From: Schmidtea nova | Lineage: Eukaryota | DNA: 64,000 bases | Assembly (NCBI GenBank): GCA_044892505.1 | Contig: CM097882.1 | Coordinates: forward strand, 384,090,001-384,154,000 | Direction: 5' to 3' | Translations under genes and position numbers: made by a program | Shown here: piece after piece, positions 35,102-54,725 of the stretch | Numbering within the stretch: position 1 is the first letter of the stretch | Layout of the letters: each line of letters starts with the position of its first letter | The notes under the pieces: model-generated | Database searches by the model: none | The model's input: only the letters and a program-made list of their open reading frames with translations | Told to the model about the DNA's origin: nothing

Positions 35102-35884
35102 TTAATTTAAGATTTTACTCCAAGCTGCTTTTACCCAACCAACAACATCCTGTAATTTAGGTTTGATATAATTACCTTTTACATTACGTTCGCTTTTGGT
35201 TTCAATATAGATGTTAATTTCTTCCCGAAGATAATTCTTAAATGGCTTATTTAATCCAATATCCAAACTTTGTAAATATGCTGTCATGCCGGATGGAATC
35301 ATGACTTGATCAATATTCTGATTCGAGAGATACTCTTTCATTGTATTAGGTCGGTGTGTACTGCCAGAGTCCCACACCAGTAGTTTCTTTTGATTGTGCC
35401 GTAAAACTGGTGGAAACATCAAATTGATCCATTTTTTAAAAACATCTTGGATACACCAAGCTTTTTCAGTTTCTAAGACGTAAATTCTAGAAATACAATT
35501 GATCATTTCCTTTGTTCCTTTCGTAATCAGCACAGGAGTTAATTTCTTGCCATTACAATCAATGGCAAGAATACATGTAACTCTTGTACTTTCATACCCG
35601 GTTGATAGAATACTGATCGACATAGACCCTTTTCGATCAATTGCTGTTTGTACAGCCTGGCCAAAAAATACCGATGTTTCGTCCATAGCAATTATATTTG
35701 ATGGTTGATATTGTTCAAAATTTAAATTATCCATAAATGTTTTAAAATATAATGCTTCTTTGATGATTTCCACGTCATCTAGCTTAAATAATGTCTTTGA
35801 CCTTCTTAAAGACAGTTTGTATCTGGTTAGAAATCCATCAATCCAGTGTTGTGAAGCTTTGAACTTATCTAAAGAGATATTAAA
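35102..35884 (-). pseudogene. pogo transposase, C-terminal part (CENP-B HTH end + DDE_1)
   Basis: Reads FKASQHWIDGFLTRYKLSLRR, IIAMDETSVFF, LLVWDSGSTH and LQSLDIGLNKPFK. It joins in frame with 51000-51320 when the insertion is excised (1,104 nt, 368 codons). Confidence 0.9.
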
Positions 35885-35888
35885 CTGT

Positions 35889-36932
35889 TGTTAGGGTTCG
35901 AGATCAAGGGATCTCGGGTTTTTGTAATTAAATATTATAAGTAAATAAATAAATATAAATAGCAATTAAGAATTACTATAAATAGATAGATAATAATTAT
36001 AGTAATAAATAAATAGATAAATAGTAATAGTAAATAAATAATTACTATAAATAAATATAGATTAAATATAGTAATAATTAAATAGTATATAATAAATATA
36101 GTAATAAATAAATACATGATAAATTTAAATAATAATAATAAGTTATATATAGTAATAATAAATTACTTTCAATAAAAATATAATAATTATAAATATTTTT
36201 AAAGGCAGTGGTAAAACACCACCGCAGTTTTAAGAGATGATGATGAGCGTAGTAGTGTGTAAACCTACTATCGTTCAAATTGTATATATACTGATTACAA
36301 AATCAGTTGAAAAAAACATAATTTTTACAGAAGTGAATTTTAGAACATAAGTGTTTACAGAATAGTGAATTTTAGTTCAAAGTTAAATTTGCGTGGAGAG
36401 AATAATTTTACAGAATTTCATTTGTGATAATTTTCCGAAATTGGAATAACCTTTGAGCAAATTATTAGCTGGTAAATTTTCTAGTTTGATTTAATTCTAT
36501 AAATCGATCACGGGGAAATAGTTATATTACTATTTTTCCTCTTCAGTAAAGTCGTTAAATAATAAATTATTAGAAGGGAAATTATTAGGTCACAGTGACA
36601 ACCATTTCTGGGTTGTCACTATCGCGATTAAACTACCGGGAAACCCCTCATCTTGTGTCCTTTCCTTTAGTCGGAGCTGTTGAGCCTTTTAGGTCCAGCT
36701 TTCGTTCTTAAACTCTGAGGACGGTTTGTATAACCGATTTTCTAACTTTTGCTTTGCAGCTATTTTTATTATATTGTACATTGATATACATATTTCACAA
36801 TACATTTTATTAAAAGGAATTAGTTCTTGTTTTCTTTACACACAACCTAAAACATATATTTTATTTATAACTATATAAGCGGATTATCGTTTGGAGTCCG
36901 ATAATCAAATCAAATCAAATCAAATCAAATCA

Positions 36933-36995
<63 letters not shown>

Positions 36996-37031
36996 CTGTG
37001 TTCGTCGTAAACCACTGATACGAACCGAACA
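35889..37031 (+). repeat. 5' LTR (1,143 bp)
   Basis: Identical to 49867-50999 in a line-by-line comparison except one substitution (GTAAAC/GTAATC) and 10 extra nt of (TA)n. Contains a TATATAAG at ~36872, a 10-bp hairpin at 36595-36621, (TCAAA)n and (TA)n. Confidence 0.97.
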
Positions 37032-37034
37032 TTT

Positions 37035-37052
37035 TGGTGAGCCCGACGTGAT
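37035..37052 (+). promoter_or_regulatory. PBS, tRNA-Trp
   Basis: TGGTGAGCCCGACGTGAT, 3 nt after the LTR; 17/18 match to the established tRNA-Trp PBS. Confidence 0.9.
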
Positions 37053-37123
37053 ACAATTATTATCAGTGGGCATATTGTTATATATACAAAATAGCTCCTA
37101 AAAAGACAAAAGTTGTGGAGGAC

Positions 37124-38002
37124 ATGGCTGAAGAGAATAATGTTTTTGCTAGATATCCCGCTTTACCTGTCAAGGCATTTAGCGGAGATCCAGGGGAATT
37201 TCCGGAGTTTATGTCAGAGTATTATCAGATGGCAAAGGCCTATGGGTATCCAGATGCAATAATGATACAAAGACTGCCAATTTACCTTAAGGGTATGGCA
37301 AGGGAAAACTACAATGATATTATGGCGTTACCAACAGCAGATAAACCAGGTACATGGGAAAAGATGAGAGAATCACTAACAGCTAGAATATTACCGGGAG
37401 ATTCAAGCAGAATTTTCCGACAACAATTTTATCATAGAAAACAGAATGCCAATGAGCATGTAGGAGAATTTTCTTATCAATTATTGTTACTAGCAGAAAG
37501 AGCATTTGGGCTCAGAACTACCTGGAATGATGCAACTAAAGCTATGGTTAAAGACCAATTATTAGCTGGATTCACAAATGTAATGAGAAATGCATTGATT
37601 CTCCACACGGGAGATGATTTTTGGGAATTAACCAGAAAAGCTGTCGTAATCGAAAGCAGCTTAGAAAAGGCTACCTCATTTATGGTAAATAATGAGAAGC
37701 CAGCAATTGAATGTTTTAACTGCCATAAGAAGGGGCATATATCAAAAGATTGCCACAGTAAGAAGGTAGCTGATACTCGTAGGAGTATTCAGTGTACTAA
37801 ATGTGGTATAAATAATCATAGTGTTGAGAACTGTAGAGTCACGAACTTGCAGTGTGATAAATGCAAACGCAGAGGGCATGTGGCTTCCGTTTGTAGAGTT
37901 AGGAATCTCCCCACGAATGGGAATTTTAATATTAAAAGGGATGATGTTAATTCATCAGGAAAGATAAATGCCACGGATGTGGAAAATTCGGGCATATTCT
38001 GA
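37124..38002 (+). CDS. Gag (capsid + three CCHC knuckles; a fourth knuckle lies in the -1 frame at 37969-38010)
   Basis: CFNCHKKGHISKDC, CTKCGINNHSVENC and CDKCKRRGHVASVC; capsid-like helical region. Confidence 0.93.
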   Translation: MAEENNVFARYPALPVKAFSGDPGEFPEFMSEYYQMAKAYGYPDAIMIQRLPIYLKGMARENYNDIMALPTADKPGTWEKMRESLTARILPGDSSRIFRQQFYHRKQNANEHVGEFSYQLLLLAERAFGLRTTWNDATKAMVKDQLLAGFTNVMRNALILHTGDDFWELTRKAVVIESSLEKATSFMVNNEKPAIECFNCHKKGHISKDCHSKKVADTRRSIQCTKCGINNHSVENCRVTNLQCDKCKRRGHVASVCRVRNLPTNGNFNIKRDDVNSSGKINATDVENSGIF

Positions 38003-41000
38003 GGTCGTGTCCTCAAAATCAGAGTAATAATATGAATAGTAGGACTACCAATAGTGGTAATGTCAGCAAGCCAAAAACTACGTTCATGGTCAATCACGAT
38101 AAAGAATTGACGTATTTGCAACAACTGGAAATGGAAATCCAGGAGGAGAAAAATCGATTAGCACGGCTAATGGATCGAGATGATACAGTTTTTATGATTT
38201 CAGCTGAGAAAAATCATGCTCACACAGATGAGCGAGGAACAGTTTTGATGAATACAATTGAAGAAATAAATGAGACTCCCACAGTTGGGCAAGAGACAGT
38301 TTTTATGATTTCAGCTGAGAAAAATCATGCTCACATGGATGGGCGAGGAACAGTTATAATGAATCCCATTGAGGAAAGCGATGATGCTCACACAGTTGGG
38401 CAAGGAACAGTTTTGATGATTTCAGCTGAGAAAAATCATGATGCTTACACAGATGAGCAAGGAAATAGTGAACCCATGGATTCCAGCAGCGAGAATCATG
38501 AGGTAATAGAATCAGAGACAAATTCTGATAATGATGACGAACCCAGTATGAGTACCATACTGAGCGAGTTCGACCAGGCTTTGTTCAAGGAAACAAAGGC
38601 CAAGAAAGGGTCAGATACCCTAGCAAAATGTTTTAAACTGGTGGATTCCAGATATGAGTATCAGCAGAGACTGACTAGAGAATTAGAGAAATTATCACAA
38701 GGTGATATCAAGAACAGTGAAATTGGAAAGATATTACAATTAATATCTCAGGTCGAAGATGATCCAAGGTATCATAGCGACATACATAAAATCCTACGAA
38801 AGATAGGAACTGCAATGGAGCATGAATGGGATCTTCAGGATTCGCATTTAAACATAAAACTTCCTCAGGAGCAGGAGTTTAACATCGACATGAATGTAAG
38901 ATGTCGAACAGACAAGTTGTCAGATACAATGATGAAATTGAAACATAATAGATATGATTTTTATTTATATGGAGAAAAGTTAGTAGTTGGGGAAACACTA
39001 CTACAAAATGGTGTATTACCAGGAAGGGTAACGAAACTCACAACGAAACTGACAGGAATATCGGTCCCAGTAGTGGATCAAGACAGTGTGTTTCTACTCA
39101 CACAAATGGAAATTGCACAGTTGGAGGAAGTCCAACAAATAGAGCAACGCCTGAAGATAGAGTTGCAGAAATCTCCGAGGGATGGAGAAACAATCAAGGA
39201 AATATTAGACTGGATGTTGGTATTGCGCATACCAGTAGAATCATTGGAGAGTATAATTCCTATTCTACTACCTGTAGTAAAGGAAACTAGTTCATTTCAA
39301 ACGGAAATAAAAATGTTAATGAGAAAAAATGGAACAGCAATACGTCATCAAGCACATCGACAAGGCATGATAACTTTAGACATTCGAATATCGGGAAAAG
39401 AACCCATGACGAGGTTATATCGTTGTTTTAGCAAAGTAATAACTTTGAGAAAAGATTTAATAGATACTGGGCAGACTACCGGTATATTCTTGATTATGAT
39501 TCATGGAGGGCAAGTGGATGATGATGAATATTTAGTAGATGTGGGATGTCTACCATTTGAAACGACAACAGTAGCAATCATTCCCGTAGAGCCACCTGAA
39601 TCTCAATGGTCAGCATTACGGTTACCAGATGAAATGGTCACTGGTAATGTTGAAACACAACCATTTAATGTAGATATCGATGCCGATAATCACGGAGAAG
39701 AGGAAATCAGACTCAATAATGAGGAAACTAACGTGGGAGCTTCAACTTCTCGGGCGGTAGAAACTATCAGGCCAGAATGGCAGACAAAGAAAGATAGGCG
39801 AGGAAGGCCTAGGAAAGATCAAATGAAACCTCCACCAACGGAGCAATTAAACCAAGAAACCATTAAACAGGTTCAGATGAAAACCCTGTCAGGAATAGCC
39901 AGGGATGTTGATATGAGAGACGAAGGTGTACATATACCAGAAAAATCTCTGACATGGAAGAGATTAAAACAGATCATAGGAATATTAAAGCCGGAATGGC
40001 AGATTACTCGGATTAAAGGAATTCAAGTGGATAAAGTGACACAGTCAATCGCGAAGACGATGAGGAGATTACCTAGAGGGGTACCGCAAAACGAGATACA
40101 GAGTATGTTAGAGACACTCATACAAGATGGGTTATCTAAAGGAAAAATAGTGACAGCATTATCTATGTTGATTCAAGATGCTTTATCCCGCACAGGCAAT
40201 GAGAAGAAACTTATTAATCGAGAAATAGACCAGATCACGGAGATAACGGAGCATTATCTTGGAACGTGGATGAGTGAAAATAACTTCTGGGAAGAGGAGA
40301 AACATAAACCACGATATGAATTTGTGGAAGAGGCTATGAATAACAACCACCTCGGAAATGGAGAAATGGGGAATATGACGAATATGATATTAATGTTTTT
40401 AGTAATGATGGGGATTATGAAACAGACAAACACAATGACAGCGTTTGATTGCAGTGATCCAAAGTTAGCTCGGATATATTCGCTCGTAGATGCAATTGAG
40501 TGCAAAGAGGCATATCCAGAGAAAGTCCAAACAGGAGAAAAGGTCGAATACTATGTCTACCAAGAAAGTGAATTCTTCAGAACTAAGATAAGAGAATGTA
40601 GAGTCCAAAGAGCGACGTTTGAATATTATTGTGGTTCACACAGCTATACAGCTTTTCTATCAGCCACTCTAATACCTAGACCAGTTAACATATTGCCAGA
40701 AGATTGTCTAGATGCCTTTCGAAAAGGTACTTTAAGAATCGATAACGAGGTAACCATCGCCGCGGAAGTAGTAAAAACACTGGGAGTAACAATTACACGA
40801 GGAGGATCAATCGGATCAGATGGTACCTGTACGGGAAGAAAGAAAACTCGCGGATCGGAGTGTGTAAGTTTTGTCGTAGATATTGAGGACTATTCAATCG
40901 AATTAAGAGAATACGAAGGGACGTTCGATGTATTATCAGGTAGATTAATGGCACACCCTCAGTGCCTTGCGAAATTTGGAAGCTGCAGAACAGGGGTCAT

Positions 41001-43308
41001 TACATTATTATACGATCAAATACTAGACCATTGCGAATTGTCATTACTAAAGAAAATTAATTTCCATAAGTTGAACGGGACAAAGTATCGAGATTTACCC
41101 AAAAGAGAAAGAATTTGGGATAAAGAAAAGACGTTGAAAAGGATCAACAAACAGCAAAAAGAGGATATTAGTGAGGAAATCACACCTCTAGTATTAGTAT
41201 CAGAAGATAAGAAAGATGCAATCAGATTTGTCAGAAAAGATAAGAAGACAAAATGCGGAAAAGTGGTGTACGAGACCAACTATAAAGGATTATATTTGTC
41301 AAAAACATTTATCCAAAAAGCCAAGAATATTCACAGCCAGGATATCAAAATCACGAACTATATAAATAATAAAATAGATTATTTATATCATGATCTGCAA
41401 GGACAAATGCAGGAAATGTATCAGGAAGTAATACTCAATGATTGCAAACTAAATCGCGAAATAGTTCGAAATCGATTAGCGATATCAATCGTGAATCCGG
41501 ATCTAGTGACACCTATGTTGCTAGAAGATGGAATGTTTGGCAGAATTATGGGGGAAGCTATATACAGCTATCAATGTCAACCCATAGAGGTACAATTAAC
41601 ACGGTATAATGAATGTACTCTAGAATTACCAGTGTCATATCAAAACAAAATACGATTTGTAATGCCAGTAACGAGGAGACTTTTGGATGAAAAACAAAAG
41701 CCTCAACCTTCAATTTGCAATCCAGCAATATCGCCGTTATACAAGGTAAATGATAGATGGATCTCATTACCTGACCGAAAACCATCTAATAGAAAGGTGG
41801 AAACATTGGAAGTCACGAAACTCGAGGAAAACATGGAATTTAAATCACTCGATGAATTATCACAAGGAGGAATTTACACTCCAGCAGACATTGAGGAGGC
41901 AAGACAGACATTGCTATTCCCTCAAGTAAGAGAAAGAGGTATCACAGAAATCATAAGAACAATTTACCAAGCAAACGAAATGAGACCAGATTACAATTTA
42001 TTATTTGGTCCAGATCATTATAAAGAAGCAGCTAAAAATGTGATGATGAAAATATGGGGAAGGTTTACCAATTTTGGTATTTTCGTGGCAGGCTGCTCAG
42101 GAATATATGCAATATTCGTAATTCTAAAGTTAATAATAACACAATTAATTTCCACATACAGTATATTCAAAATCGGTGGATGGTCTTGGAAGTTGATACT
42201 AGGATTATGTCCTATGTGTGCGGAATTTGCATTGTTTAAACACCATCGTAAAGAAATAAAGACAATCAAACAGAGAAGCTTGGTAAAACACGAGATTATT
42301 GGAATCGAAATGGAGGGTAATACAAGTTATCGGGACGATAACAATTCGGAAGGAGGAGGTAATGGAGACTCTCTTAATACAGTTCAGAGGCAAAGTAGAA
42401 GTCGAAAAAGAAACTACAATAAAAAACCGAATCATCAATTAAGGAAAATGAAATATCGGGATTATCAACCACCTTACGAAGCGACAAAACAGATTTTCGA
42501 CAAAAGTATGATTTCAGAAGATGAATACGATAGTGCAGACCAGAAATTTGCAATCAATACAGCATCGCCTAGATTGAAAAGAAGCCCAAGATATATGCAA
42601 TTGCCATATCTTAGAAGTTTACCAACAGCGCCAAAGGGGGAATCGCCAGAGTTTCAAAAGACATCAGGAGAAGGCAAGCCAAGTTATGCTTTAACTTTAC
42701 CAAGGAACAAAATTTACACTTCTAAACATCAACAAATTCTCGACAAAGATGCTCGAGAGACAGGTAAAAGCATATCATTATCGTTAGAAAATGAAGGGAA
42801 ACTGTATCCTATCGAGTCGTTAGAAGCAATAAAAGCTAAATTCAAGGAATATAATCCAAAATTGAGTGATACCGAACAAGATGAGGCAGAGAAATTCAGA
42901 GCAAATACCATCGGGATAACGCATGCTACTATTTTGATGGCAAATGGGGTGAACTTGGATAAGAAACCCATGATAAAGATAAAAATAAACAGACACACAG
43001 TTAATGCAGTGATAGATTCAGGAGCCGACGGCACTATCATAGAGGCAACACTATTAAATCAAAAAGAATTGGAATCAATGGAAACCTCTAGAGTTTCGCT
43101 AACAGGTGCTACAGGCACATCATTGAATATTATTGGTACTCTAGCTTGTAACATCAAGCTATGTGACCAAGAATTTCGTCATGATATTATAGTCATGAGA
43201 ATTTGTCCAGTAGAATGTCTACTAGGAATGGATCTTTTAAGAAGATTAAAAGGAGTTGTGTTCGATTGTGCTACCGGATTGTTAGTTAGATCAATCGGTA
43301 AGAAATGA
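37951..43308 (+). CDS. Polyprotein part 2: 4th CCHC - 37-aa repeats - helical/ubiquitin-like modules - signal peptide - gB/chuvirus-type glycoprotein - TM - aspartic protease
   Basis: The frame is open from 37951 (CHGCGKFGHILRSC). Glycoprotein motifs: AFDC, YYCGSHS, YINNKIDYLY, GEAIYSYQC, LPV, P.TR, GGIY. TM at ~42060-42240. Protease AVIDSGADGT (Asp at 43015) with LLGMDLL. Confidence 0.85.
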   Translation, partial: FIRKDKCHGCGKFGHILRSCPQNQSNNMNSRTTNSGNVSKPKTTFMVNHDKELTYLQQLEMEIQEEKNRLARLMDRDDTVFMISAEKNHAHTDERGTVLMNTIEEINETPTVGQETVFMISAEKNHAHMDGRGTVIMNPIEESDDAHTVGQGTVLMISAEKNHDAYTDEQGNSEPMDSSSENHEVIESETNSDNDDEPSMSTILSEFDQALFKETKAKKGSDTLAKCFKLVDSRYEYQQRLTRELEKLSQGDIKNSEIGKILQLISQVEDDPRYHSDIHKILRKIGTAMEHEWDLQDSHLNIKLPQEQEFNIDMNVRCRTDKLSDTMMKLKHNRYDFYLYGEKLVVGETLLQNGVLPGRVTKLTTKLTGISVPVVDQDSVFLLTQMEIAQLEEVQQIEQRLKIELQKSPRDGETIKEILDWMLVLRIPVESLESIIPILLPVVKETSSFQTEIKMLMRKNGTAIRHQAHRQGMITLDIRISGKEPMTRLYRCFSKVITLRKDLIDTGQTTGIFLIMIHGGQVDDDEYLVDVGCLPFETTTVAIIPVEPPESQWSALRLPDEMVTGNVETQPFNVDIDADNHGEEEIRLNNEETNVGASTSRAVETIRPEWQTKKDRRGRPRKDQMKPPPTEQLNQETIKQVQMKTLSGIARDVDMRDEGVHIPEKSLTWKRLKQIIGILKPEWQITRIKGIQVDKVTQSIAKTMRRLPRGVPQNEIQSMLETLIQDGLSKGKIVTALSMLIQDALSRTGNEKKLINREIDQITEITEHYLGTWMSENNFWEEEKHKPRYEFVEEAMNNNHLGNGEMGNMTNMILMFLVMMGIMKQTNTMTAFDCSDPKLARIYSLVDAIECKEAYPEKVQTGEKVEYYVYQESEFFRTKIRECRVQRATFEYYCGSHSYTAFLSATLIPRPVNILPEDCLDAFRKGTLRIDNEVTIAAEVVKTLGVTITRGGSIGSDGTCTGRKKTRGSECVSFVVDIEDYSIELREYEGTFDVLSGRLMAHPQCLAKFGSCRTGVITLLYDQILDHCELSLLKKINFHKLNGTKYRDLPKRERIWDKEKTLKRINKQQKEDISEEITPLVLVSEDKKDAIRFVRKDKKTKCGKVVYETNYKGLYLSKTFIQKAKNIHSQDIKITNYINNKIDYLYHDLQGQMQEMYQEVILNDCKLNREIVRNRLAISIVNPDLVTPMLLEDGMFGRIMGEAIYSYQCQPIEVQLTRYNECTLELPVSYQNKIRFVMPVTRRLLDEKQKPQPSICNPAISPLYKVNDRWISLPDRKPSNRKVETLEVTKLEENMEFKSLDELSQGGIYTPADIEEARQTLLFPQVRERGITEIIRTIYQANEMRPDYNLLFGPDHYKEAAKNVMMKIWGRFTNFGIFVAGCSGIYAIFVILKLIITQLISTYSIFKIGGWSWKLILGLCPMCAEFALFKHHRKEIKTIKQRSLVKHEIIGIEMEGNTSYRDDNNSEGGGNGDSLNTVQRQSRSRKRNYNKKPNHQLRKMKYRDYQPPYEATKQIFDKSMISEDEYDSADQKFAINTASPRLKRSPRYMQLPYLRSLPTAPKGESPEFQKTSGEGKPSYALTLPRNKIYTSKHQQILDKDARETGKSISLSLENEGKLYPIESLEAIKAKFKEYNPKLSDTEQDEAEKFRANTIGITHATILMANGVNLDKKPMIKIKINRHTVNAVIDSGADGTIIEATLLNQKELESMETSRVSLTGATGTSLNIIGTLACNIKLCDQEFRHDIIVMRICPVECLLGMDLLRRLKGVVFDCATGLLVRSIGKK

Positions 43309-46300
43309 AAAGTTTATAATGATGATACAGTTTTCATCGATCATACAATGATAATACCACCCAGAGCAGAAACAGTATGTTTCGTGTCCACTAGCGAACA
43401 GTGGGAAGGAGAAGTTGTATTCGAACCAGATGAAAGGTTCTCAGCAAAATATAATCTACCAATTACGCATAGCGTTGGTAAAGTTGAAAATGGCAGAATA
43501 CCAATTCGGGTAGCCAATTTAGATATAAAACCATTAAAATTGTATCCAGATACAAGAGTAGGGAGAGTATCAAAGTCTGATCAATTACCGAATGGAGGAT
43601 CTGTCCTGACAATAAAGGCAGAAAATAGAGAACCAGACATTGAGTACTATGATGCGCCAACGGCAAATAGTAAAGCTCTTTCACGAAGAGAGAATATCCA
43701 AGTCAACATGTTATTAAGAAAATATGATCAGGTATTCGCCAAGCACGAATATGATTTGGGAAAGACGAACTTGTTGGAACATGAAATTGTTCTTAACAAT
43801 ACGAAACCAATAAAACTGAGACCGTATCGAATTCCGTTTAGCTTGGAAGAACCTGTCGATAAGCAGGTAAAACTGATGTTAAAACATAACATCATCAGGC
43901 ATAGTAAATCACCATACCAGTCACCAATGATAGTAGTGGCAAAAAAGGATGGAACAGTACGACTATGCAACGATTATCGAATGGTAAACGAAGCAACTTG
44001 CAAGGATAGTCACCCATTACCATTACTGGATTACATCTACGGTCGTATGAGAAATTCAAAATATTTCTCAGTATTGGATGCTCAGAAGGGGTTTTACCAA
44101 ATCAAGTTAAAAGAGGAGACAATACCAATTACGGCTTTTTCTACAAGCCTTGGACACTTCGAATATACAGTAATGCCATTTGGTCTCACAGGAGCGCCGG
44201 CAACGTTTCAAAGAGCAATGAATCTAATGTTAATGGATGTTCATCATGCAATGGTATAAATAGATGACATCATAGTATTTTCTCCAGATTTGGAAAAACA
44301 TTTAGAACATTTAGAGGACGTATTCAAAAGGTTAATTAATGCAAATCTTAAGGTAAAACCATCAAAATGTAAATGGGCCGAATCAGAAGTAGTCTATGTC
44401 GGTCACATTATCTCGAAGGATGGAGTAAAACCAGATCCAGCAAATGTTGAGAAAGCAAAGAATTTTCCAGAGCCAAAGACAGTCAAACATATTAAAGGGT
44501 TTTTGGGCTTAGTGGGATATTACAGGAAGTTCATCAGGAACTTTTCGGCAATAGCATTTCCTTTAACACAATTAGAGGGCAAAAATGTCAAATTTGTATG
44601 GGGAAAAGAGAAACAGGAAGCATTTGATATGCTAAAGAGGATGCTCGTGGAACCTCCTATATTACGGTTTCCAGATTTTGAGAAACAATTTTTGGTCATG
44701 ACAGACGCCAGCACTCGGGGTATTGGTGCTGTGTTAGGTCAGAGAGATGACCTAGGAGACGAATACGCCATAGCGTATGCTAGCAGAGGATTAAAACCAC
44801 ATGAAAAGAATTACGCAGTTATCGAATTAGAAGCATTAGCAATTGTGTATGCTATACACCAATTCAGGACATATTTATGGGGTCGAAAGATCATTGTGTA
44901 TACGGATCATAGACCATTACAGTGGTTAACAAAGCATACTATGGATACATCAAAATTGGTTAGATGGGCACTGATCTTGCAGCCATACGACATCGAAATA
45001 CATTACCGAAAAGGACACCAAAATGGGAATGCAGATGCATTTTCTCGAATGGACCAGGGTGATGAAGCAGAAGATGTCAAAGAAGGAAGATTAGAAGGAA
45101 CAATCTTCGCACTTACAAGAGAAGCAAACAGACTCGCGGATTTAATGGCAGCACAACAATCGGATGAAGAGATAAACCAAATCAGACAGGCTTTAGAAGC
45201 AAAGTTCATACCGACGGAATTTAATAAATATTGGGAGAAAAATCGAGACAAATTTATCCTTGAAGAAGGATTAGTCAAATATGTGGATGTAAGGGATAAT
45301 GTCAAAATGGTCCCTAAGAAATATCGCGAAGCTTTGATGTTACAATATCATGATGGAGCACTGGGAGGGCATTTGTCTGCCAGGAAAACATTGTCAAGGT
45401 TGAAGCAGAAATATTTCTGGCCGACAATCAAACAAGACATACAGGAATGGTGTCAGACATGTAAGATCTGTATCACCAGGAGAAATACGGGGAAGAAACC
45501 GCATGTGCCAATGAAACCAATGCCAGTACCATCCACACCGATGGAAATGACGGCAATGGATGTTTTAGGGCCATTCAAAGAATCAAATAGTGGTAACAAA
45601 TACATATTAGTATTTTGCGATTACTTGACAAAATGACCGGAGGCTTATCCGATACCGAATCACAAGGCAGATACGATAGCCAGGATTTTCGTAGAGCAAA
45701 TCGTTTTTAGGTATGGAGTACCTACAAAACTACTAACAGATAGAGGAGCAGATTTCATGAGTAATCTGTTAAAAGGAATAAATGATTATTTCGACATTTT
45801 AAAATTGAATACCTCTCCATACCATCCACAAACAGACGGATTGGTAGAGAGATTTAACGGAACGCTTGCAAATATGCTAGCATCATACGTAAATTCAGGG
45901 CAAACGGATTGGGATATACATATCCCATCATGCCTATTCGCATATAGAAATGCTGTTCATGAGGGTACGGGACAGACGCCGTTCTATCTCATGTATTTAA
46001 GGCAAAGTAAAATGCCTATAGATTTGTTGTTCTTCCCAAAAGCAACACAGTATCTAGACCAAGAAAATTACCTCATGGAAATGAGAGAAAGAATGCAAGA
46101 AGCATGGACAAAAGCCGGTCTTAGTATAAAATTCAGCCAGGAAGCGTCGAAAGATTATCATGATAAGAAAGCCAAAGGACATGGCATGTTAGTTGGAGAC
46201 AAGGTGATGTTGGAAAGCCATTATAATAAAAAGGGCTTATCACCAAAATTAATGAGAAACTTCAAAGGACCGTATGAGGTTTTGAGAACCACAGACACAA

Positions 46301-47391
46301 ATTTAATCTTGCAATTAGTAGCAAATAGAAAAGCTGAACCAATAATGGTACATGCTAACAGATGCAAGAAAGTTGCGGTCACAGAGAAAGATCAGGTTAA
46401 GAAAAGGGAGGATAAAGGGTCAGAACCAGTCTCAGACCGATATCCATTACGATCAAGGGGCGTGCCAAAATCAGTTACATTTTTGGTAATAATAAGTTGC
46501 CTCATATCCTGTGTAAAGACATTTGTTCCCACAGCGGTTCAAATCCAAGATCTCGCATTCAGAAGATCTTTTCAGGAATTTCGGATAATATCATTAGCTG
46601 AAAATGATACCAAATTCAAGTTCTCGTTTTGCGAACGACGTTGTTTCCATTTTACATTGGATTCAAACACAAGAGTGAAAGTCATAAAGGACTTACGAGC
46701 AGAAAAGGAATATTTATTAGATATACTTGTTCAACATTTTATGTTTGGACGATGGTCAGATTTTTCAAAGTCACAATGGAAGCTGAAGACAGCGGATTTC
46801 AAAAGGAAAGTTAGAATAAATATCCAACAAGGTATGATTACCTTCAGCCAACCAAAACAAGGAGTGGATAGGGTAAAGATAGAAATCCATTCCGACAAGG
46901 AAATAGTACAAGAATTGTGGCTAAATGAAGATATTGAGAAACAAAATCTCAAGTGGAACAGCTCAGTGGAGTGGGAAGCTCATATCACTTATATGAATAA
47001 TAAACAAAAGCCCGGAGTCGATGAATGGAATGAGGTATTTTATGAAGTAATCTCTTTGAAATTACCTCAATCATCGACGACAACGAAATCAGTTACATCC
47101 TTGATACGGAAAGAAAGTTACGTCATTCATCCGGCAATATGGCAGAGATTGAAAGGATTGAAAATGGTAAAACCAACAGTATCAACAGAAAGCTATATTA
47201 AAAGTTGTCAGTGTGAAATTAATGAAGTAAACCCCATTACTCACTTGGGAAAATTACCCGTTGGGGTATGGATTATTACGTCAGCAGTATTAGCTATGAT
47301 CACTACATTGATAGCAATGGGAGTTTGGATGAAACTATTCTTCAGCCAGGCTATTGAGTCGGTTGATGGGATTATGATGACGAGATTATGA
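43309..47391 (+). pseudogene. Pol (RT, RNase H, integrase with HHCC and GPY) plus a C-terminal membrane protein; same frame throughout, interrupted by stops at 43306, 44257 and 45634
   Basis: RLCNDYR, LDAQKGFYQI, V*IDD (YIDD), TDASTRGIG, YTDHRPL, HDGALGGH..CQTC, LTDRGADF, NGLVERFN and KGPY. Confidence 0.95.
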
Positions 47392-47577
47392 CAATTACAG
47401 ATAAAATCACATATTTGTATTTATATATATATTAAAATCTATAATCTTGTTGAGCTCCGAGTAGCATTAACTTACAGCATAAGTAGATCCCGTAAATCGA
47501 GATTTATGCATTTCTTTTTAGCCAATATTGGCATATCAGTATATCTGATATTAACGTTAATTATTTTTCTTTCAGAT

Positions 47578-49542
47578 ATGAAGCATCAAGTGTCACAATA
47601 CAAGCAGCGTTATAGCACTATCGATGTGCAAACAGTACAGAAGGAAAAATTGATTTATCGAAACATCGAAAAAGCGATATCCGCAGAAGCACGGAAAGGT
47701 CGTCGCTATTGGTATTACGGGCACTGCACCGGCATCCCGAACAATTTTAAGTTTCTTGGATCACCTAAGAGACAAATGTGCATAGTCACAATTACCAGCC
47801 GGGAGAACACCCGGTTGACTGAACACATGGCGGAATTTAACAGATCAACATTTACTCACCATCTCCTGATTCACGCGATCAACAAACCCTTTACAATCTT
47901 CATGGCAGGTGCCACGGGACCCATCCTACTTCAACCAGAATCAACTCTAGAAATTAGTAACGGAGATGGCAGAGAAAAGAATATCTCCATCCAATGTGAC
48001 GGATATAATACTATTGTGGTATTAGAGATTTTGGAACCCAGCAAGGCAGTGCAATCATTGTGGAAAAATGAACCTGCCTGGACCTATAATGTGAATGAGA
48101 ACGATCTCAAGTCATTCAAATCCTTTGTTCGGATGAATTTGCACCCCAATCAAGAAGATAAATTGTCAATATTTGTTGCAGCGCATTACGCAACCTTGCG
48201 AGATTATTTAAAGCCAGCTTTGGTGGCTGTTTCGATAGCAAACTACTGTGGTGATTTAATACTAAACACGGTGGTTACACCCAGAAACCAGGTCAAACAT
48301 TACCAATCGCACGCGCATGGTATGACCGAAAAAGAAATCATCGGACAATTTGACGGAGAGGATTGCGCAGACCGTATTAGAAAATTATGTGATGGGAAAA
48401 TCCTAATAGTTCTCCAAGTCAACGACTTCTTGGAAGCAGTCCAGTTACATCCTCAACGAGTTTTGGGCATTAGGGAACTAGGAGCAGCAAAATGCCTGGA
48501 AGCGAGAGAACTAAAGAAATGTAACGGACATTATCGACTCGCGTATTTATCAAAGTCAATTCTCGAAAAGGAAGAACTAAACCGTTCAGATCTGAAAACG
48601 GAAAACGACGTGGAAACGACACGTAATATTTACCTTAAACTGAGAGAAGTTTGGGTAGATGACATTACCCCAGGTAATCTTAGTGGGACGATTACATCAG
48701 AAGTCAAAATGGTTCATACAATACAGCCGCAAGAAACGAGTAAAAGGAAAGCTATTGAGAGCTTACCCCAGGAACAGCCATTATCAACCAAATTGCAAAA
48801 GATAGTTAAGGAAGAATCACTATCCCCTCCAGCTATATCCTTAGCTGATGAAGACGATTACGCCACCTGTGAAAGCGAGGGTGAGGAGCAAACAGAGATG
48901 CGTTTAACTTTACACGGAGACAGCCGTACAATTACAAAGATCGTGTCAGAAAATCCACCAAAGAAAGAGAACAAGCTCTTGGAAAAAGTTACTAAGACTT
49001 TTCAAAAACTGACTTCAGTGGAGAAGTCGTCCCCAAAGAAAAGTCAAGAACCTGTTGTAAGGTTACAAGATCTAAAGATCAAAAAGAAAGTACCAAACCC
49101 TATCTCGACGGAAGACAAAGACTTAATCGAAACAGCATTCGTTCCTCCCGATATGGAACAGATTCCTGAGGTTAAGGGCGAACCTATCATTATAAGAGAA
49201 AGGGATTTCGTTGGAACGGGGAATTCAGCAAAGACACCCCAGGATTTGGATAACGAAGACCCTAGTTTTTGGCAGCGACCAGAAAGGAATTGGGTATCTC
49301 GGATAAAAGAATACGACGGGAAACCGGTACACCAATCATCAGTTTCAAACTTCCCTTACTATGGCGTATTGGAGGCCAACGGAAAATCATACGTGATTTC
49401 GTCTTTGGTATATAAGGAAGTCGAAACACGTGAAACATTGGTGGTCAGCTATAGACCAGATATAGTGGAAGACCGTATCAAGAACGAACAAGCGCATATT
49501 CGCAAGAGAGCAGCTCAAAACCTATTCGCAAAGGATAACTAG
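47578..49542 (+). CDS. Accessory ORF3 (~654 aa), probably spliced: degenerate AlkB-like + degenerate ISG20/REX4-like exonuclease + low-complexity tail
   Basis: Strong acceptor TTATTTTTCTTTCAG|ATATG. The exonuclease-like block VAVSIANYCGDLILNTVVTPRNQVKHYQSHAHGMTEKEI...IRKLCDGKILI parallels ISG20. The AlkB-like call is weaker. Confidence 0.65.
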   Translation: MKHQVSQYKQRYSTIDVQTVQKEKLIYRNIEKAISAEARKGRRYWYYGHCTGIPNNFKFLGSPKRQMCIVTITSRENTRLTEHMAEFNRSTFTHHLLIHAINKPFTIFMAGATGPILLQPESTLEISNGDGREKNISIQCDGYNTIVVLEILEPSKAVQSLWKNEPAWTYNVNENDLKSFKSFVRMNLHPNQEDKLSIFVAAHYATLRDYLKPALVAVSIANYCGDLILNTVVTPRNQVKHYQSHAHGMTEKEIIGQFDGEDCADRIRKLCDGKILIVLQVNDFLEAVQLHPQRVLGIRELGAAKCLEARELKKCNGHYRLAYLSKSILEKEELNRSDLKTENDVETTRNIYLKLREVWVDDITPGNLSGTITSEVKMVHTIQPQETSKRKAIESLPQEQPLSTKLQKIVKEESLSPPAISLADEDDYATCESEGEEQTEMRLTLHGDSRTITKIVSENPPKKENKLLEKVTKTFQKLTSVEKSSPKKSQEPVVRLQDLKIKKKVPNPISTEDKDLIETAFVPPDMEQIPEVKGEPIIIRERDFVGTGNSAKTPQDLDNEDPSFWQRPERNWVSRIKEYDGKPVHQSSVSNFPYYGVLEANGKSYVISSLVYKEVETRETLVVSYRPDIVEDRIKNEQAHIRKRAAQNLFAKDN

Positions 49543-49831
49543 CATTTCTGCTACGTTCAATCCAAGGTCTAGCAATAAGCTATGACAACTATCAATCAAA
49601 CAATTAGCATTTCGGCTATGTAATCAACAATCCAACTCTTACAGACAGTTATTATTTGATATCGATTGTGATCAACATTACTTATGTATTATGTGTTTTA
49701 TGAGACTCATTTGTTTTTATGCGATTTATTTTAATTTTTATTGACCACGTGCATTTAATGTATATATATGCATGTGTTGTTATTTTATTTTTATTTTATG
49801 GCTGCGTAACCTTCTTGTCTTTTCCGCTTTA

Positions 49832-49866
49832 ATTTTCGGGACGAAAATCTTGTTAGGGGGAAGACA
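49832..49866 (+). promoter_or_regulatory. GGA-loop hairpin and polypurine tract before the 3' LTR
   Basis: ATTTTCG-GGA-CGAAAAT, then AGGGGGAAGACA immediately before TGTTAGGG. Confidence 0.85.
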
Positions 49867-50910
49867 TGTTAGGGTTCGAGATCAAGGGATCTCGGGTTTT
49901 TGTAATTAAATATTATAAGTAAATAAATAAATATAAATAGCAATTAAGAATTACTATAAATAGATAGATAATAATTATAGTAATAAATAAATAGATAAAT
50001 AGTAATAGTAAATAAATAATTACTATAAATAAATATAGATTAAATATAGTAATAATTAAATAGTATATAATAAATATAGTAATAAATAAATACATGATAA
50101 ATTTAAATAATAATAATAAGTTATATATAGTAATAATAAATTACTTTCAATAAAAATATAATAATTATAAATATTTTTAAAGGCAGTGGTAAAACACCAC
50201 CGCAGTTTTAAGAGATGATGATGAGCGTAGTAGTGTGTAAACCTACTATCGTTCAAATTGTATATATACTGATTACAAAATCAGTTGAAAAAAACATAAT
50301 TTTTACAGAAGTGAATTTTAGAACATAAGTGTTTACAGAATAGTGAATTTTAGTTCAAAGTTAAATTTGCGTGGAGAGAATAATTTTACAGAATTTCATT
50401 TGTGATAATTTTCCGAAATTGGAATAACCTTTGAGCAAATTATTAGCTGGTAAATTTTCTAGTTTGATTTAATTCTATAAATCGATCACGGGGAAATAGT
50501 TATATTACTATTTTTCCTCTTCAGTAAAGTCGTTAAATAATAAATTATTAGAAGGGAAATTATTAGGTCACAGTGACAACCATTTCTGGGTTGTCACTAT
50601 CGCGATTAAACTACCGGGAAACCCCTCATCTTGTGTCCTTTCCTTTAGTCGGAGCTGTTGAGCCTTTTAGGTCCAGCTTTCGTTCTTAAACTCTGAGGAC
50701 GGTTTGTATAACCGATTTTCTAACTTTTGCTTTGCAGCTATTTTTATTATATTGTACATTGATATACATATTTCACAATACATTTTATTAAAAGGAATTA
50801 GTTCTTGTTTTCTTTACACACAACCTAAAACATATATTTTATTTATAACTATATAAGCGGATTATCGTTTGGAGTCCGATAATCAAATCAAATCAAATCA
50901 AATCAAATCA

Positions 50911-50963
<53 letters not shown>

Positions 50964-50999
50964 CTGTGTTCGTCGTAATCCACTGATACGAACCGAACA
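49867..50999 (+). repeat. 3' LTR (1,133 bp)
   Basis: Direct repeat of 35889-37031. Confidence 0.97.
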
Positions 51000-51320
51000 C
51001 TGTGGTGTTAACTGAATTGCAAGTTTTTGAACATCCACTCTTCGAACAACAAAGGTTTCGGCTCATTGTTGTAAAATCCATTCGAAAATCATATCTTCCA
51101 ATTCATTATGTAACGGTTTCCTTCCTGTACCAACACGCCGGACTTTAAAATTTCCAGTATCTCTTTGTTGAATGAGATTGTCATATTCTTCTCTCCATCG
51201 TCGAACCATCTTCTAATCAAGATTATTCTCATTACAAAATGTTGTTAAACATTTTCCCCTTGATTCTTCTACAATATTTATTTTATATTCAACTGAATAG
51301 CTTTGTCTAGTTCCTGCCAT
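51000..51320 (-). pseudogene. pogo transposase N-terminal part (two stops)
   Basis: Reads MAGTRQSYSVEYKINIVEE...MVRRWREE...GTGRKPLHNELEDMIFEWI. Confidence 0.88.
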
Positions 51321-51659: not shown

Positions 51660-52927
51660 GTGTTCAATGAATTACAGGGATTCAATTATCAGATATGATG
51701 CTATGGGAGGCAGACCTAGCGTTGATGTTACTATGAATGGTAGATGTTTGGTAGAGCAAATATCAGTGTCAAAGATCGCAATATGATTGATAAATGTTAT
51801 ATGAATAATGACAGAAAGAGTAAGATGAAAGTAAAATGTGTAAATGACAGTCCCCTTAATATTTTTGGAACTATTATGATAAACATTAAAATTCAGGGAA
51901 TAAAAGAAAGTAAAGATACACAATTTTTTATAGCAGATGAAATTAGACCTCAACTAATTGGTGTAATGAACTTCCTAGATAAATTTGGTATCTGGTTGAA
52001 TATAGATGATTGTATAAATGATAGACTGATTCGTAAGACAAAGTTATCGAAATTGTCGGTAAATTTCATAGAAGAAGGAATTACTGAAAGGAAAGTTAAA
52101 GATATAGTAATTAATAATTTAATAAACAATTACGACAATGTTTTTATGAAACACAAGTAGGATGTGGGGAAAACTGACTTAATGAAACACGAAATAATTA
52201 CTGAGAGAAAATCTTTAGCACTCAACCCAAGAAGACAACTGACTCAGCTACTGGATAAAATCGATGAACAAATAAAATAAATGGAAAGGTTTGTCATTAT
52301 CAAGGAATGTGAATCACCATGGAATACACCATTAGTATGTGTGAAGAAAAAAGGAAAGATGATATTAGAATATGCTTAGACTATAGATCACTAAATAACG
52401 TAGCAGAAAGATCGGTGTTCCCAATGTCAAACATGAATGAATTATAAGATGTTTTGAATGGATCAAAGTATTTTTCTATAGTCGATCTGGGAAATGCATA
52501 TTATCAAGTTAACTAGAAGAAGAGTCTAAAATTAAAACAGCATTTTCAACTAAAAATAAGCAGTATTGTTTTAATAGAAACCTTTCGGAATTGCAGCAGC
52601 ATTAGGAACATTTCAAAAACTCATGAATAGAGTACTAGGAGAATTGAATTAGATAGAAGCGGTAGTAAACTTAGATGATATTCTGATTTTCTCAAAAACA
52701 TTAGATGATCATTATAGATCGATAGAAAAAGTATTTCTGAAGATTGAAAAAGCGGGATTAAATATCAGCCCATAAAAGAGCTATTTTAAAAGAAAAGAAA
52801 TTAAATTTGTGAGGTATATAATAAATAAAGAAAGCATTCAAACGGATCCTAATAAAATTAAGGCAATAAAAGAATTTGATAGACCGAAATGCTTAAAATA
52901 TTAGGAAGTTTCTTAGGACTAGCCAAT
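51660..52927 (+). pseudogene. Gypsy element B protease/RT relic
   Basis: GRPSVDVTMNG, CESPWNTPLVCV, DYRSLN, DLGNAYYQV, LDDILIFS and FLGLAN; many stops and frameshifts. Confidence 0.88.
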
Positions 52928-54177: not shown

Positions 54178-54725
54178 ATGCCGAAAAGAACTCAGACCAA
54201 GTACCACTGCCAGCCGACAGTGATCAACGTCCTAAATGTCACAACGAGTGACGATATTCCAGTAGAAATCTACAACACAGCTGAGAGGCATATGCGAGCT
54301 TGGAGACGCCGACATGTAAATATGAGAGTGTCCGTCGGGGAGACTCTCTACCGATATCGAATCAGATGGGAAGGTGACCCTGTCTGGCCGGAGATGAAAG
54401 AGGACCATGCCAAGGCTTCACGAGGTGGTTCGTCCATGAAAAGGTCCGTTGGATGCTAACCTTCATCAAAATTCCAATTGGTATTTTCCAACGGCTTGGC
54501 TACACCTTTATTGGCCCTCTAAGATGCATTAAGACAGGGAAAGTGCGACCCTACATCAACTCTCCAGGGCATCGCGACCTGCATCAAGACACATGGGATC
54601 CGAAAACAACCCTACGGGAAGTATTCGTATACAGGGACGAATTATGCTGGATTCCCTGTCCATATTTCTATCACCCGGATGGAACCGGCAAAGAAAACCG
54701 AACCTGCGATCAAGACTGGATTTAA
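54178..54725 (+). pseudogene. ORF1 of the 3-kb element, copy 2 (one frameshift)
   Basis: CTAATTTGCAG|CTCATG; homologous to 3745-4290. Confidence 0.7.

What the first reader, a model, noticed from the sequence alone, without database searches (positions are those of the whole stretch)
40375..43308. Env placed between Gag and protease: a membrane-threaded Gag-Env-Pol polyprotein with a gB/chuvirus-type fusogen
Seen: in one uninterrupted frame, an internal signal-like stretch (MTNMILMFLVMMGIMKQTNT) precedes a ~540-aa Cys-patterned ectodomain (AFDC, CRVQRATFEYYCGSHS, C..KFGSC, YINNKIDY, DC, GE.IY.YQC, C..ELPV, P.TR, GGIY). A TM region at ~42060-42240, a ~240-aa tail and the aspartic protease follow, then same-frame RT-RH-IN. 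Established: this motif series characterises class III (herpes gB-like) glycoproteins of chuviruses and of env-bearing BEL/Pao and some Gypsy elements, where env normally lies 3' of pol. Inference: the polyprotein crosses the ER membrane like a flavivirus or togavirus polyprotein, with Gag cytosolic, the glycoprotein luminal and PR-Pol cytosolic and membrane-anchored. Pol and Env would be made 1:1 with Gag and co-packaged by topology. This could be an undescribed infectious retrovirus-like architecture.
Basis: partly seen in the sequence, partly recalled or inferred. Interest (0 to 1): 0.92.

Follow-up and report, generated by a model that had tools for sequence, protein, structure and literature searches.

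The report
Retroelement with envelope gene before polymerase
This is a young but defective copy of a Ty3/gypsy-type retrovirus-like element whose herpes-gB/chuvirus-type envelope gene sits between gag and protease, a real and conserved gene order that was already published in 2022-2026.

Summary
A 1,758-codon ORF contains the whole finding. A signal-like stretch opens a 622-aa region that matches Pfam PF24664 (Monjiviricetes_fusion) at E 4.5e-89. Its model (pLDDT 88.6) matches herpesvirus gB (E 5e-14) and chuvirus glycoproteins (E 6e-42, TM 0.65). A membrane anchor, a basic tail and a retroviral protease follow, then Ty3-like RT, RNase H and integrase in the same frame.

It lies in a 15.1-kb LTR element (35889-50999) with a 4-bp target duplication. 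The LTRs differ by one substitution and one indel.

The order gag, linker, signal, env, anchor, protease, pol is family-wide. At least twelve distant relatives (27-42% identity in env) carry env upstream of protease or pol in one open ORF. Some also have gag in that ORF.

Two corrections apply. In this copy gag is in another frame, and pro-pol holds three in-frame stops. The GAG-ENV-POL order with gB-type env is also already described (Sacco et al. 2022; Chary and Hayashi, eLife 2026).

The membrane-threaded polyprotein remains an inference. The conserved internal signal, usually without its own start codon, favours it. I found no published treatment of it.

Verdict: new member of a known kind, moderate interest.

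The parts
35885..35888 (+). Target-site duplication, left copy (CTGT)
   Evidence: Same 4 bases flank both ends of the element.
35889..37031 (+). 5' LTR, 1,143 nt, TG...CA ends, with an internal (AT)n run
   Evidence: Aligns to the 3' LTR with 1 mismatch and one 10-nt indel.
37034..37053 (+). Primer-binding-site-like sequence starting TGG, 2 nt after the LTR
   Evidence: Read from the sequence. The matching tRNA was not identified, and the window holds no tRNA gene.
37115..38002 (+). gag ORF (first ATG at 37124): capsid-like N-terminal part and three CCHC zinc knuckles, in a different frame from the long ORF
   Evidence: zf-CCHC E 5e-6. PDB hits are retroviral nucleocapsids. 28-29% identity to the gag part of P0008 and to the gag ORF of L001.
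37951..40374 (+). Start of the long frame: a fourth CCHC knuckle, 37-aa tandem repeats (38182-38460) and a ~780-aa linker of unknown function. First ATG at 38032.
   Evidence: No Pfam family. Residues 373-549 resemble the pre-env part of P0003 and P0002.
40375..40434 (+). Internal signal-peptide-like stretch (20 aa), with a predicted signal-peptidase site just before the conserved (A/G)(Y/F)DC motif
   Evidence: Hydropathy 2.7 over 12 aa. The same n-h-c pattern sits at the env start of all 13 relatives.
40435..42072 (+). Env ectodomain, a class III (gB/chuvirus G-type) fusion glycoprotein
   Evidence: PF24664 E 4.5e-89. AF2 pLDDT 88.6. Foldseek to gB E 5e-14 and to chuvirus G E 6e-42. The family profile hits only gB in the PDB.
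42073..42147 (+). Membrane anchor (stop-transfer helix)
   Evidence: KD up to 2.35. A weaker 17-aa Cys-containing stretch and a basic cluster follow. A long helix is modelled here.
42148..42957 (+). Basic, polar tail of ~270 aa linking the anchor to the protease
   Evidence: No Pfam family, no likeness between relatives, 45 K+R against 33 D+E.
42958..46458 (+). pro-pol: aspartic protease, RT, RNase H, integrase zinc finger and core. Broken gene with three in-frame stops and no frameshift.
   Evidence: Pfam RVP, RVT_1, RT_RNaseH, Integrase_H2C2. Best solved relative is Ty3 RT, 4ol8, E 7e-34. Collinear in one frame with intact relatives.
46459..47391 (+). Post-integrase extension of ~310 aa bracketed by two hydrophobic segments. 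Function unknown.
   Evidence: No Pfam family. AF2 model unusable, pLDDT 46.
47506..49542 (+). Downstream ORF of 678 aa. Function unknown.
   Evidence: No Pfam family. 23% identity over 427 aa to the ORF downstream of pol in L002.
49855..49866 (+). Polypurine tract abutting the 3' LTR
   Evidence: Read from the sequence.
49867..50999 (+). 3' LTR, 1,133 nt
51000..51003 (+). Target-site duplication, right copy (CTGT)

Best explanation
The finding is the env gene of a 15.1-kb endogenous LTR retroelement of the Ty3/gypsy (Metaviridae) type. Its gene order is gag, linker, env, protease, RT, RNase H, integrase, followed by two further coding stretches.

Shown:
- Env is a class III fusion glycoprotein of the herpes gB / chuvirus G kind.
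- Its position upstream of protease, in the same ORF, is conserved across distant relatives.
- This copy inserted very recently: its LTRs are almost identical.
- This copy is defective. Pro-pol has three in-frame stops, and gag is in a different frame from the rest.

Inferred for the intact family:
- The long ORF is translated as one chain.
- The internal signal sequence directs the emerging Env into the ER, and signal peptidase frees its N-terminus.
- The anchor helix stops transfer, so the tail and protease-RT-integrase stay on the cytosolic face, tethered to Env.
- The element's own protease then cuts them off.

Gag is either part of the same chain, as in some relatives, or made from a separate upstream ORF, as here and in one relative.

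My confidence by step: identity of the element and Env about 0.95, family-wide order about 0.9, threading mechanism about 0.5.
For: Element:
- LTR pair, TG..CA ends, CTGT duplication, polypurine tract.
- Pol domain order and Ty3 as the best solved relative.

Env:
- Pfam PF24664 E 4.5e-89.
- A 74-sequence alignment with 13 conserved cysteines, all present.
- The family profile finds only gB in the PDB.
- AF2 pLDDT 88.6.
- The Foldseek top 50 are all gB, E about 5e-14 over ~640 columns.
- BFVD top hits are chuvirus glycoproteins, E 6e-42 to 1e-36, TM 0.54-0.65.

Order:
- P0001, P0002, P0003, P0004, P0005/P0152, P0007, P0012, P0016 and P0017 have env, then protease and, where the ORF is long enough, RT-RH-IN in one ORF.
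- P0008 has a gag homologue plus env in one ORF.
- P0003 has CCHC knuckles, linker, env and protease in one ORF.

Threading:
- A signal-like n-h-c stretch sits exactly at the env start in all 13 relatives.
- Seven of them have no Met within 15 aa upstream.
- A strong anchor sits at the env end in all.
- A basic cluster follows the anchor.
- Composition is uniform across 38-50 kb.

Precedent: the single Gag-Pol-Env polyprotein of Atlas virus (PMC9094657).
Against: - No expression, splicing or protein data exist for this element.
- In this copy and in L001 the gag ORF is not continuous with the long ORF. Here the frames differ and the overlap has no canonical slippery heptamer. In L001 several stops intervene. 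How ribosomes reach the long ORF is therefore unclear.
- Signal and topology calls rest on hydropathy alone, because SignalP and DeepTMHMM were not available.
- A second weak hydrophobic stretch after the anchor could in principle be a second pass, which would put pol on the wrong side.
- Only one N-glycosylation sequon is present.
- This copy itself cannot make pol.
Confidence: 0.6

Rival explanations
1. Env is not made from the genome-length message. A spliced subgenomic RNA removes gag and the linker and joins an upstream start codon to the signal sequence, as in avian retrovirus env and the Cer1 CERV protein. Continuity with the protease frame would then be tolerated rather than used.
For: - Spliced env messages are the rule in retroviruses, and Cer1 makes CERV from a spliced RNA (PMC10309623).
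- In the window and in L001, gag is not continuous with the long ORF, so some other route into it is needed.
- The missing Met before the signal in most relatives is also what a borrowed start codon would leave.
Against: - No stop separates env from protease in at least 9 divergent relatives, so even a spliced message would yield an Env-Pol chain.
- Pol has no other visible route to translation.
- Five relatives keep CCHC knuckles and env in one ORF.
- No splice evidence is at hand.
Confidence: 0.3
2. The arrangement is an accident of this locus: a chuvirus-derived endogenous viral element or a nested insertion landed inside a gypsy element, or the assembly joined two things.
For: Chuvirus glycoprotein fragments are common as endogenous viral elements and have been captured by other retroelements (PMC7642597, PMC10084718).
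Against: - The same order, in frame, recurs in at least 12 relatives at 27-42% env identity from independent contigs.
- Base composition is uniform across the element.
- There is one LTR pair with a matching target duplication and no inner LTRs.
- No N run lies inside the element.
Confidence: 0.02
3. The env ORF is kept open because the host has co-opted it, as a fusogen or an antiviral decoy, while the rest of the element decays.
For: The env-containing ORF is intact over 5.3 kb while pro-pol has three stops. Envelope co-option is known elsewhere.
Against: - The LTRs differ by one substitution, so the insertion is too young for differential decay to say anything.
- With three stops spread at random over 11.5 kb, the chance that none falls in the first 5.3 kb is about 0.16 (my estimate).
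- Env has no start codon context or promoter of its own that I could show.
Confidence: 0.05

Closest known systems
GAG-ENV-POL 'errantivirus-like' Ty3/gypsy elements with HSV/gB-type ENV (Chary and Hayashi, eLife 2026, PMC13524379), and the nematode endogenous retroviruses of Sacco et al. 2022 (J Gen Virol 103:1739, cited there; not held in the library)
   Same: Ty3/gypsy pol, gB-type class III env, env placed between gag and pol, LTR-flanked, and an ectodomain flanked by a signal or TM and a TM.
   Different: - Host unknown, and the nearest relatives are unnamed metagenome proteins at no more than 42% env identity.
- Placement in their tree was not tested.
- The paper treats GAG, ENV and POL as ORFs and does not mention polyprotein, frameshift or splicing.
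- Here env and protease share one ORF.
- From my own memory, unverified: Sacco et al. describe a continuous gag-env-pro-pol ORF.
Glycoproteins of Jingchuvirales (chuviruses) and related Monjiviricetes; Pfam PF24664
   Same: Family membership by sequence, the same fold and the same conserved cysteines.
   Different: Those are ~650-aa stand-alone proteins of negative-strand RNA viruses with their own start codon. Here the domain is embedded 780 aa into a retroelement ORF and is continuous with protease. Identity to the ~650-aa stand-alone proteins found in the protein search is 19-26%; identity to named chuvirus glycoproteins in the fold search is 18-21%.
Herpesvirus glycoprotein B
   Same: Fold: Foldseek probability 1.00, E 5e-14, alignment over the whole ectodomain. 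The family profile hits only gB in the PDB.
   Different: 10-13% sequence identity and TM-score about 0.4 as a monomer. This is a structural relative, not a gB orthologue.
Anakin and other mosquito BEL/Pao elements with a captured chuvirus glycoprotein (Dezordi et al. 2020, PMC7642597)
   Same: An LTR retroelement that carries a chuvirus-type glycoprotein.
   Different: Pol here is Ty3/gypsy-type, not BEL/Pao. Env there is reported as a captured gene in a BEL/Pao element; from my own knowledge, not checked in that paper, it lies 3' of pol.
Atlas virus, a hookworm belpaovirus (Merchant et al. 2022, PMC9094657)
   Same: Env is translated as part of a single retroelement polyprotein with no stop codon or intron, so it must rely on internal membrane-targeting signals.
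   Different: There the order is Gag-Pol-Env, with a class II phlebovirus-like Gn-Gc at the C-terminal end. Here a class III Env sits in the middle, so the chain would have to return to the cytosol.
Flavivirus, pestivirus and togavirus structural polyproteins (works-like comparison only)
   Same: Internal signal and stop-transfer sequences would place alternating parts of one chain in the lumen and the cytosol, with processing by signal peptidase plus a viral protease (established knowledge; applied here by inference).
   Different: No homology. The protease here is a retroviral aspartic protease. Nothing about the processing is shown.

Membership tests
Class III viral fusion glycoproteins (gB / chuvirus G; Pfam PF24664) | Sequence match to the family model above its curated cut-off | tested here: met
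   299.6 bits against a cut-off of 27, E 4.5e-89.
Class III viral fusion glycoproteins (gB / chuvirus G; Pfam PF24664) | gB-like multi-domain fold with a long central helix | tested here: met
   AF2 pLDDT 88.6 with a 48-residue helix at 326-373. Foldseek top 50 are all gB. Chuvirus G TM 0.65.
Class III viral fusion glycoproteins (gB / chuvirus G; Pfam PF24664) | Conserved cysteine framework of the family | tested here: met
   All 13 cysteine columns that are at least 90% conserved in alignment A1 are present.
Class III viral fusion glycoproteins (gB / chuvirus G; Pfam PF24664) | Type I topology: cleavable signal before the ectodomain and a single anchor after it | tested here: inconclusive
   Hydropathy and motif pattern fit. 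No dedicated signal or topology predictor was available, and a weak second hydrophobic stretch follows the anchor.
Class III viral fusion glycoproteins (gB / chuvirus G; Pfam PF24664) | Bipartite fusion loops at the tip of domain I, trimer formation and fusion activity | not tested
   Only a monomer was modelled, and the loops were not mapped. Activity cannot be tested with these tools.
Metaviridae (Ty3/gypsy) LTR retroelements | LTRs with TG..CA ends, a short target duplication and a polypurine tract | tested here: met
Metaviridae (Ty3/gypsy) LTR retroelements | Primer-binding site complementary to a tRNA 3' end | tested here: inconclusive
   A TGG-initiated sequence lies 2 nt after the LTR. 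The tRNA was not identified.
Metaviridae (Ty3/gypsy) LTR retroelements | Pol order protease-RT-RNase H-integrase, with RT closest to Ty3 | tested here: met
   Pfam order. Ty3 RT 4ol8 E 7e-34 is the best solved match.
Metaviridae (Ty3/gypsy) LTR retroelements | Gag with CCHC nucleocapsid knuckles | tested here: met
   Three knuckles in the gag ORF and a fourth at the start of the long frame.
Published GAG-ENV-POL gB-type Ty3/gypsy elements (Sacco 2022; Chary and Hayashi 2026) | gB-type env located between gag and pol of a Ty3/gypsy element | tested here: met
   compared with the description in PMC13524379.
Published GAG-ENV-POL gB-type Ty3/gypsy elements (Sacco 2022; Chary and Hayashi 2026) | Host in Nematoda, Bryozoa or Platyhelminthes, and placement within their pol clades | not testable with these tools
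   Host not identifiable: no Rfam or tRNA hits, no host genes recognised, and relatives are unnamed metagenome proteins. Their sequences were not on hand.
BEL/Pao elements with chuvirus glycoprotein (Anakin type) | BEL/Pao-type pol | tested here: not met
   No BEL/Pao Pfam families appear. The RT_RNaseH and Integrase_H2C2 families and the Ty3 RT as best solved match point to Ty3/gypsy.
Membrane-threaded viral polyprotein (works-like, flavivirus/togavirus style) | Internal signal sequence without its own start codon, followed by a stop-transfer anchor, inside one ORF | tested here: met
   All 13 relatives have the signal-like stretch at the env start. Seven have no Met within 15 aa upstream. 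All have an anchor at the env end.
Membrane-threaded viral polyprotein (works-like, flavivirus/togavirus style) | Co-translational translocation and cleavage by signal peptidase and the viral protease | not testable with these tools
   Needs expression and protein data.

The most novel reading that the evidence does not exclude
In the intact family, one chain crosses the ER membrane at least twice. Env is luminal in the middle, and protease-RT-integrase hang from Env's cytoplasmic tail. In most relatives a second membrane-bracketed domain follows integrase. The replication enzymes would then be delivered to budding sites by physical tethering to the glycoprotein rather than by a Gag-Pol fusion. 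As far as I could find, this expression and packaging strategy has not been analysed for any reverse-transcribing element. The published surveys record the gene order only.
Probability: 0.35. Interest if true: 0.7.

Novelty: new member of a known kind. Interest (0 to 1): 0.4.

Why it matters
The gene order is not new, so the finding does not reveal an undescribed retrovirus-like architecture.

It still adds three things:
- An independent, well-delimited example with LTRs, a target duplication and a high-confidence gB-type Env model.
- Evidence from more than ten unnamed environmental relatives that env and protease-pol share a single ORF.
- Evidence that the Env signal sequence usually lacks its own start codon.

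This last point bears on how such elements express an envelope protein placed upstream of their enzymes, and on how those enzymes reach particles. The papers I could read do not address either question.

If the threading model holds, it would be a second, independent solution to Env expression from a retroelement polyprotein, after the Gag-Pol-Env chain of Atlas virus.

Tried and rejected
- Direct sequence search of Env against the PDB gave nothing meaningful (one chance hit at E 0.44). Only the family profile reached gB.
- Word-indexed protein searches were insensitive, giving 2 and 3 hits. The exhaustive HMMER search was needed.
- None of the window's ORF products is in the protein collection, so copy number in the host could not be judged.
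- Host identification failed. There were no Rfam families, no tRNA genes, and no Pfam hits in ten flanking ORFs. The flanks hold only transposon remnants.
- The linker, tail, post-integrase stretch and downstream ORF have no Pfam family even at E 1. Except for part of the linker, they show no detectable likeness to relatives.
- A single-sequence AF2 model of the post-integrase stretch was too poor to use (pLDDT 46), so no fold search was run on it.
- I looked for a canonical -1 slippery heptamer in the gag/long-ORF overlap and found none. In L001 simple stop read-through is excluded by several intervening stops.
- Sacco et al. 2022 is not held in the library, and the supplements of the eLife paper are not held.
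- I rejected nested insertion or assembly artefact, and BEL/Pao membership (see rivals and membership tests).
Full report
**1. What is at the coordinates**

The window has one long run of ORFs in a single frame from 38032 to 49542. The first ORF has 1,758 codons and contains the whole finding. Its translation reads as follows:
- a CCHC knuckle at the very start of the open frame;
- about 780 aa with no known domain, including 37-aa tandem repeats at 38182-38460;
- a short hydrophobic signal-like stretch starting at 40375;
- a cysteine-rich region of about 550 aa;
- a strongly hydrophobic helix at 42073-42147;
- a basic, polar tail of about 270 aa;
- a retroviral aspartic protease.

Pfam scores the 40375-42240 piece at 299.6 bits (E 4.5e-89) against PF24664, Monjiviricetes_fusion 'viral fusion glycoprotein'. 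It scores the piece after it as RVP and related protease families. The following pieces of the same frame are RT, RNase H, the integrase zinc finger and the integrase core.

**2. The element around it**

Two direct repeats, 35889-37031 and 49867-50999, begin TG and end CA. They differ by a single substitution and one 10-nt length change in an (AT)n run. They are flanked by the same four bases, CTGT. A TGG-initiated primer-binding-like sequence lies 2 nt inside the 5' LTR, and a polypurine tract abuts the 3' LTR.

The element is 15,111 bp long. Base composition is even across its interior and differs from the AT-rich flanks. The best solved relative of its RT is yeast Ty3 (4ol8, E 7e-34). Together with the order protease-RT-RNase H-integrase, this makes it a Ty3/gypsy (Metaviridae) type element, not BEL/Pao.

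**3. State of this copy**

The gag ORF (37115-38002) has a capsid-like part homologous to the gag of relatives and three CCHC knuckles. It is in a different frame from the long ORF and overlaps it by about 50 nt. I found no canonical slippery heptamer in the overlap. This is either an unusual programmed shift or one frameshift defect.

Pro-pol holds three in-frame stops, two TGA and one TAA. There is no frameshift inside pol, because the pieces align end to end, in one frame, with intact relatives.

The LTRs differ by only one substitution in 1,133 aligned bases. Three nonsense changes arising after insertion would therefore be unlikely. By my estimate about 0.25 would be expected. The defects were probably already in the template that was copied. 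This is inference.

**4. Is Env a class III fusogen?**

Yes, by four independent lines of evidence:
- The Pfam match.
- A 74-sequence alignment of the window Env with natural relatives has 27 columns conserved in at least 90% of sequences. All are present here, 13 of them cysteines. A profile of that alignment finds 38 distinct PDB sequences, every one a herpesvirus gB, at marginal E-values of 0.004-0.4, over the central-helix region.
- An AlphaFold2 model built on that alignment has mean pLDDT 88.6. Its 50 best Foldseek matches in the PDB are all gB, at E 5e-14 to 2e-11, probability 1.00, over ~640 columns. TM-scores are about 0.4 to post-fusion forms and about 0.2 to pre-fusion forms.
- Against predicted viral structures, the best matches are chuvirus and chu-like glycoproteins (E 6e-42 to 1e-36, TM 0.54-0.65). 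Qin-, xinmo-, nya- and rhabdo-like glycoproteins and gB follow.

**5. Is the position of env a family trait?**

An exhaustive HMMER search with the Env piece gave 1,434 proteins at E <= 0.001. Most are ~650-aa stand-alone glycoproteins at 19-26% identity. The closest (27-42% identity) are long ORFs with Env inside them.

Pfam scans and BLAST against the window's pieces show the following:
- P0001, P0002, P0007, P0016, P0017 and P0152 have env, then protease, RT, RNase H and integrase in one ORF of 2,146-4,844 aa.
- P0003, P0004, P0005 and P0012 have env then protease in ORFs cut by contig ends.
- P0008 has a gag homologue (28% identity, E 1e-21) and env in one ORF.
- P0003 has CCHC knuckles, the conserved part of the linker, env and two protease domains in one ORF.

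Five relatives have a CCHC knuckle upstream of env in the same ORF. The insert is thus neither a one-off nor out of frame in relatives.

**6. Evidence bearing on the mechanism**

- In all 13 relatives a hydrophobic 12-mer (KD 1.9-3.5) sits exactly where the Env homology starts, 130 to 1,350 residues into the ORF. A strong anchor sits where it ends.
- The stretch has the shape of a cleavable signal: usually one to three basic residues, a 10-14-residue core, then small residues at -1 and -3 just before a conserved (A/G)(Y/F)DC motif.
- Seven of the 13 have no methionine within 15 residues upstream. The signal is conserved as an internal signal, not as the start of a separate protein.
- In the window the anchor is followed by a short Cys-containing hydrophobic stretch (KD about 1.5 over 15 aa) and a basic cluster. 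By the positive-inside rule this favours a single pass with the tail and protease-pol in the cytosol, where they must be to work.
It remains an inference.
- The main rival is a spliced message that lends a start codon to the signal, as in avian retrovirus env or Cer1 CERV (PMC10309623). Even then, the absence of a stop before protease predicts an Env-Pol chain.
- That gag is a separate ORF here and in L001 argues against a fixed 1:1 Gag:Env:Pol ratio.

**7. Comparison with what is known**

[quoted passage not shown] They find this in several non-monophyletic clades and note ENV-GAG-POL in two mites.
- They credit Sacco et al. [quoted passage not shown] I could not read that paper. My recollection that it describes a continuous gag-env-pro-pol ORF is unverified.
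- The eLife text does not mention polyprotein, frameshift or splicing.
- A retroelement Env translated within a single polyprotein has a precedent in Atlas virus, a 2,828-residue Gag-Pol-Env chain with a class II Env at the C-terminal end (PMC9094657).
- Chuvirus-type glycoproteins captured by BEL/Pao elements are also known (PMC7642597; PMC12440569).
- The gene order is therefore already known and this element is a new member. The host could not be determined, so I cannot say whether it extends the known host range.

**8. Verdict**

- Observation: confirmed.
- Class III identity and family-wide position: supported.
- 'Undescribed architecture': not supported.
- Membrane-threaded polyprotein: plausible, about 0.5, and not treated in the papers I could read.
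- Interest: 0.4.

Noticed in passing
window 46459-47391 (+): After the integrase homology, the same frame carries about 310 aa bracketed by two hydrophobic segments 264 aa apart, like a second signal/anchor-bounded domain. A similar pair, 238-347 aa apart, follows integrase in P0001, P0007, P0016 and P0152 but not P0002. It has no Pfam family and no sequence likeness between relatives.
   Followed up: partly
window 47506-49542 (+): [quoted passage not shown] It has no Pfam family. It is 23% identical over 427 aa (E 3e-14) to the ORF downstream of pol in L002, whose product has a precomputed RNase_T (PF00929) hit.
   Followed up: partly
relatives P0001, P0002, P0003, P0005, P0012, P0152: These relatives carry two to six aspartic-protease-like domains in one ORF, and P0152 is a single 4,844-aa ORF. 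The window copy has one protease domain.
   Followed up: no
window 38182-38460 (+): There are about 2.5 tandem copies of a 111-nt (37-aa) unit inside the gag-to-env linker, 86% identical between the first two copies.
   Followed up: no
window 35889-37031 and 49867-50999: The LTRs differ by one substitution and a 10-nt (AT)n length change, yet pro-pol has three in-frame stops. The defects probably predate this insertion, so the copy was made from an already defective template.
   Followed up: partly
window 35102-35773 (-): A remnant of a pogo/Tigger-like DDE_1 transposase (E 2e-17) ends about 115 bp upstream of the 5' LTR.
   Followed up: no
window 52098-57293 (+) and 436-666 (-): A second, decayed Ty3/gypsy-type pol (RT, RNase H, integrase zinc finger; 25-40% identity to this element) is spread over more than one frame. 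A gag-like fragment near the window start is 41% identical to this element's gag.
   Followed up: no
L001 16500-24948; protein P0007: L001 is a chimeric metagenome contig: an AT-rich eukaryotic part joined to a 70-77% G+C part with bacterial genes. P0007 is filed in NCBI under a Flavobacteriaceae MAG (HBK71150.1). Both look like binning or assembly contamination by eukaryotic retroelement DNA.
   Followed up: partly
protein P0015: A 791-aa metaclust protein combines a PF24664 glycoprotein match with a precomputed Ion_trans (PF00520) hit. This may be a gene-model fusion.
   Followed up: no
window 10056-10216: A run of 161 N, either an assembly gap or masked sequence. It was left as it is.
   Followed up: no
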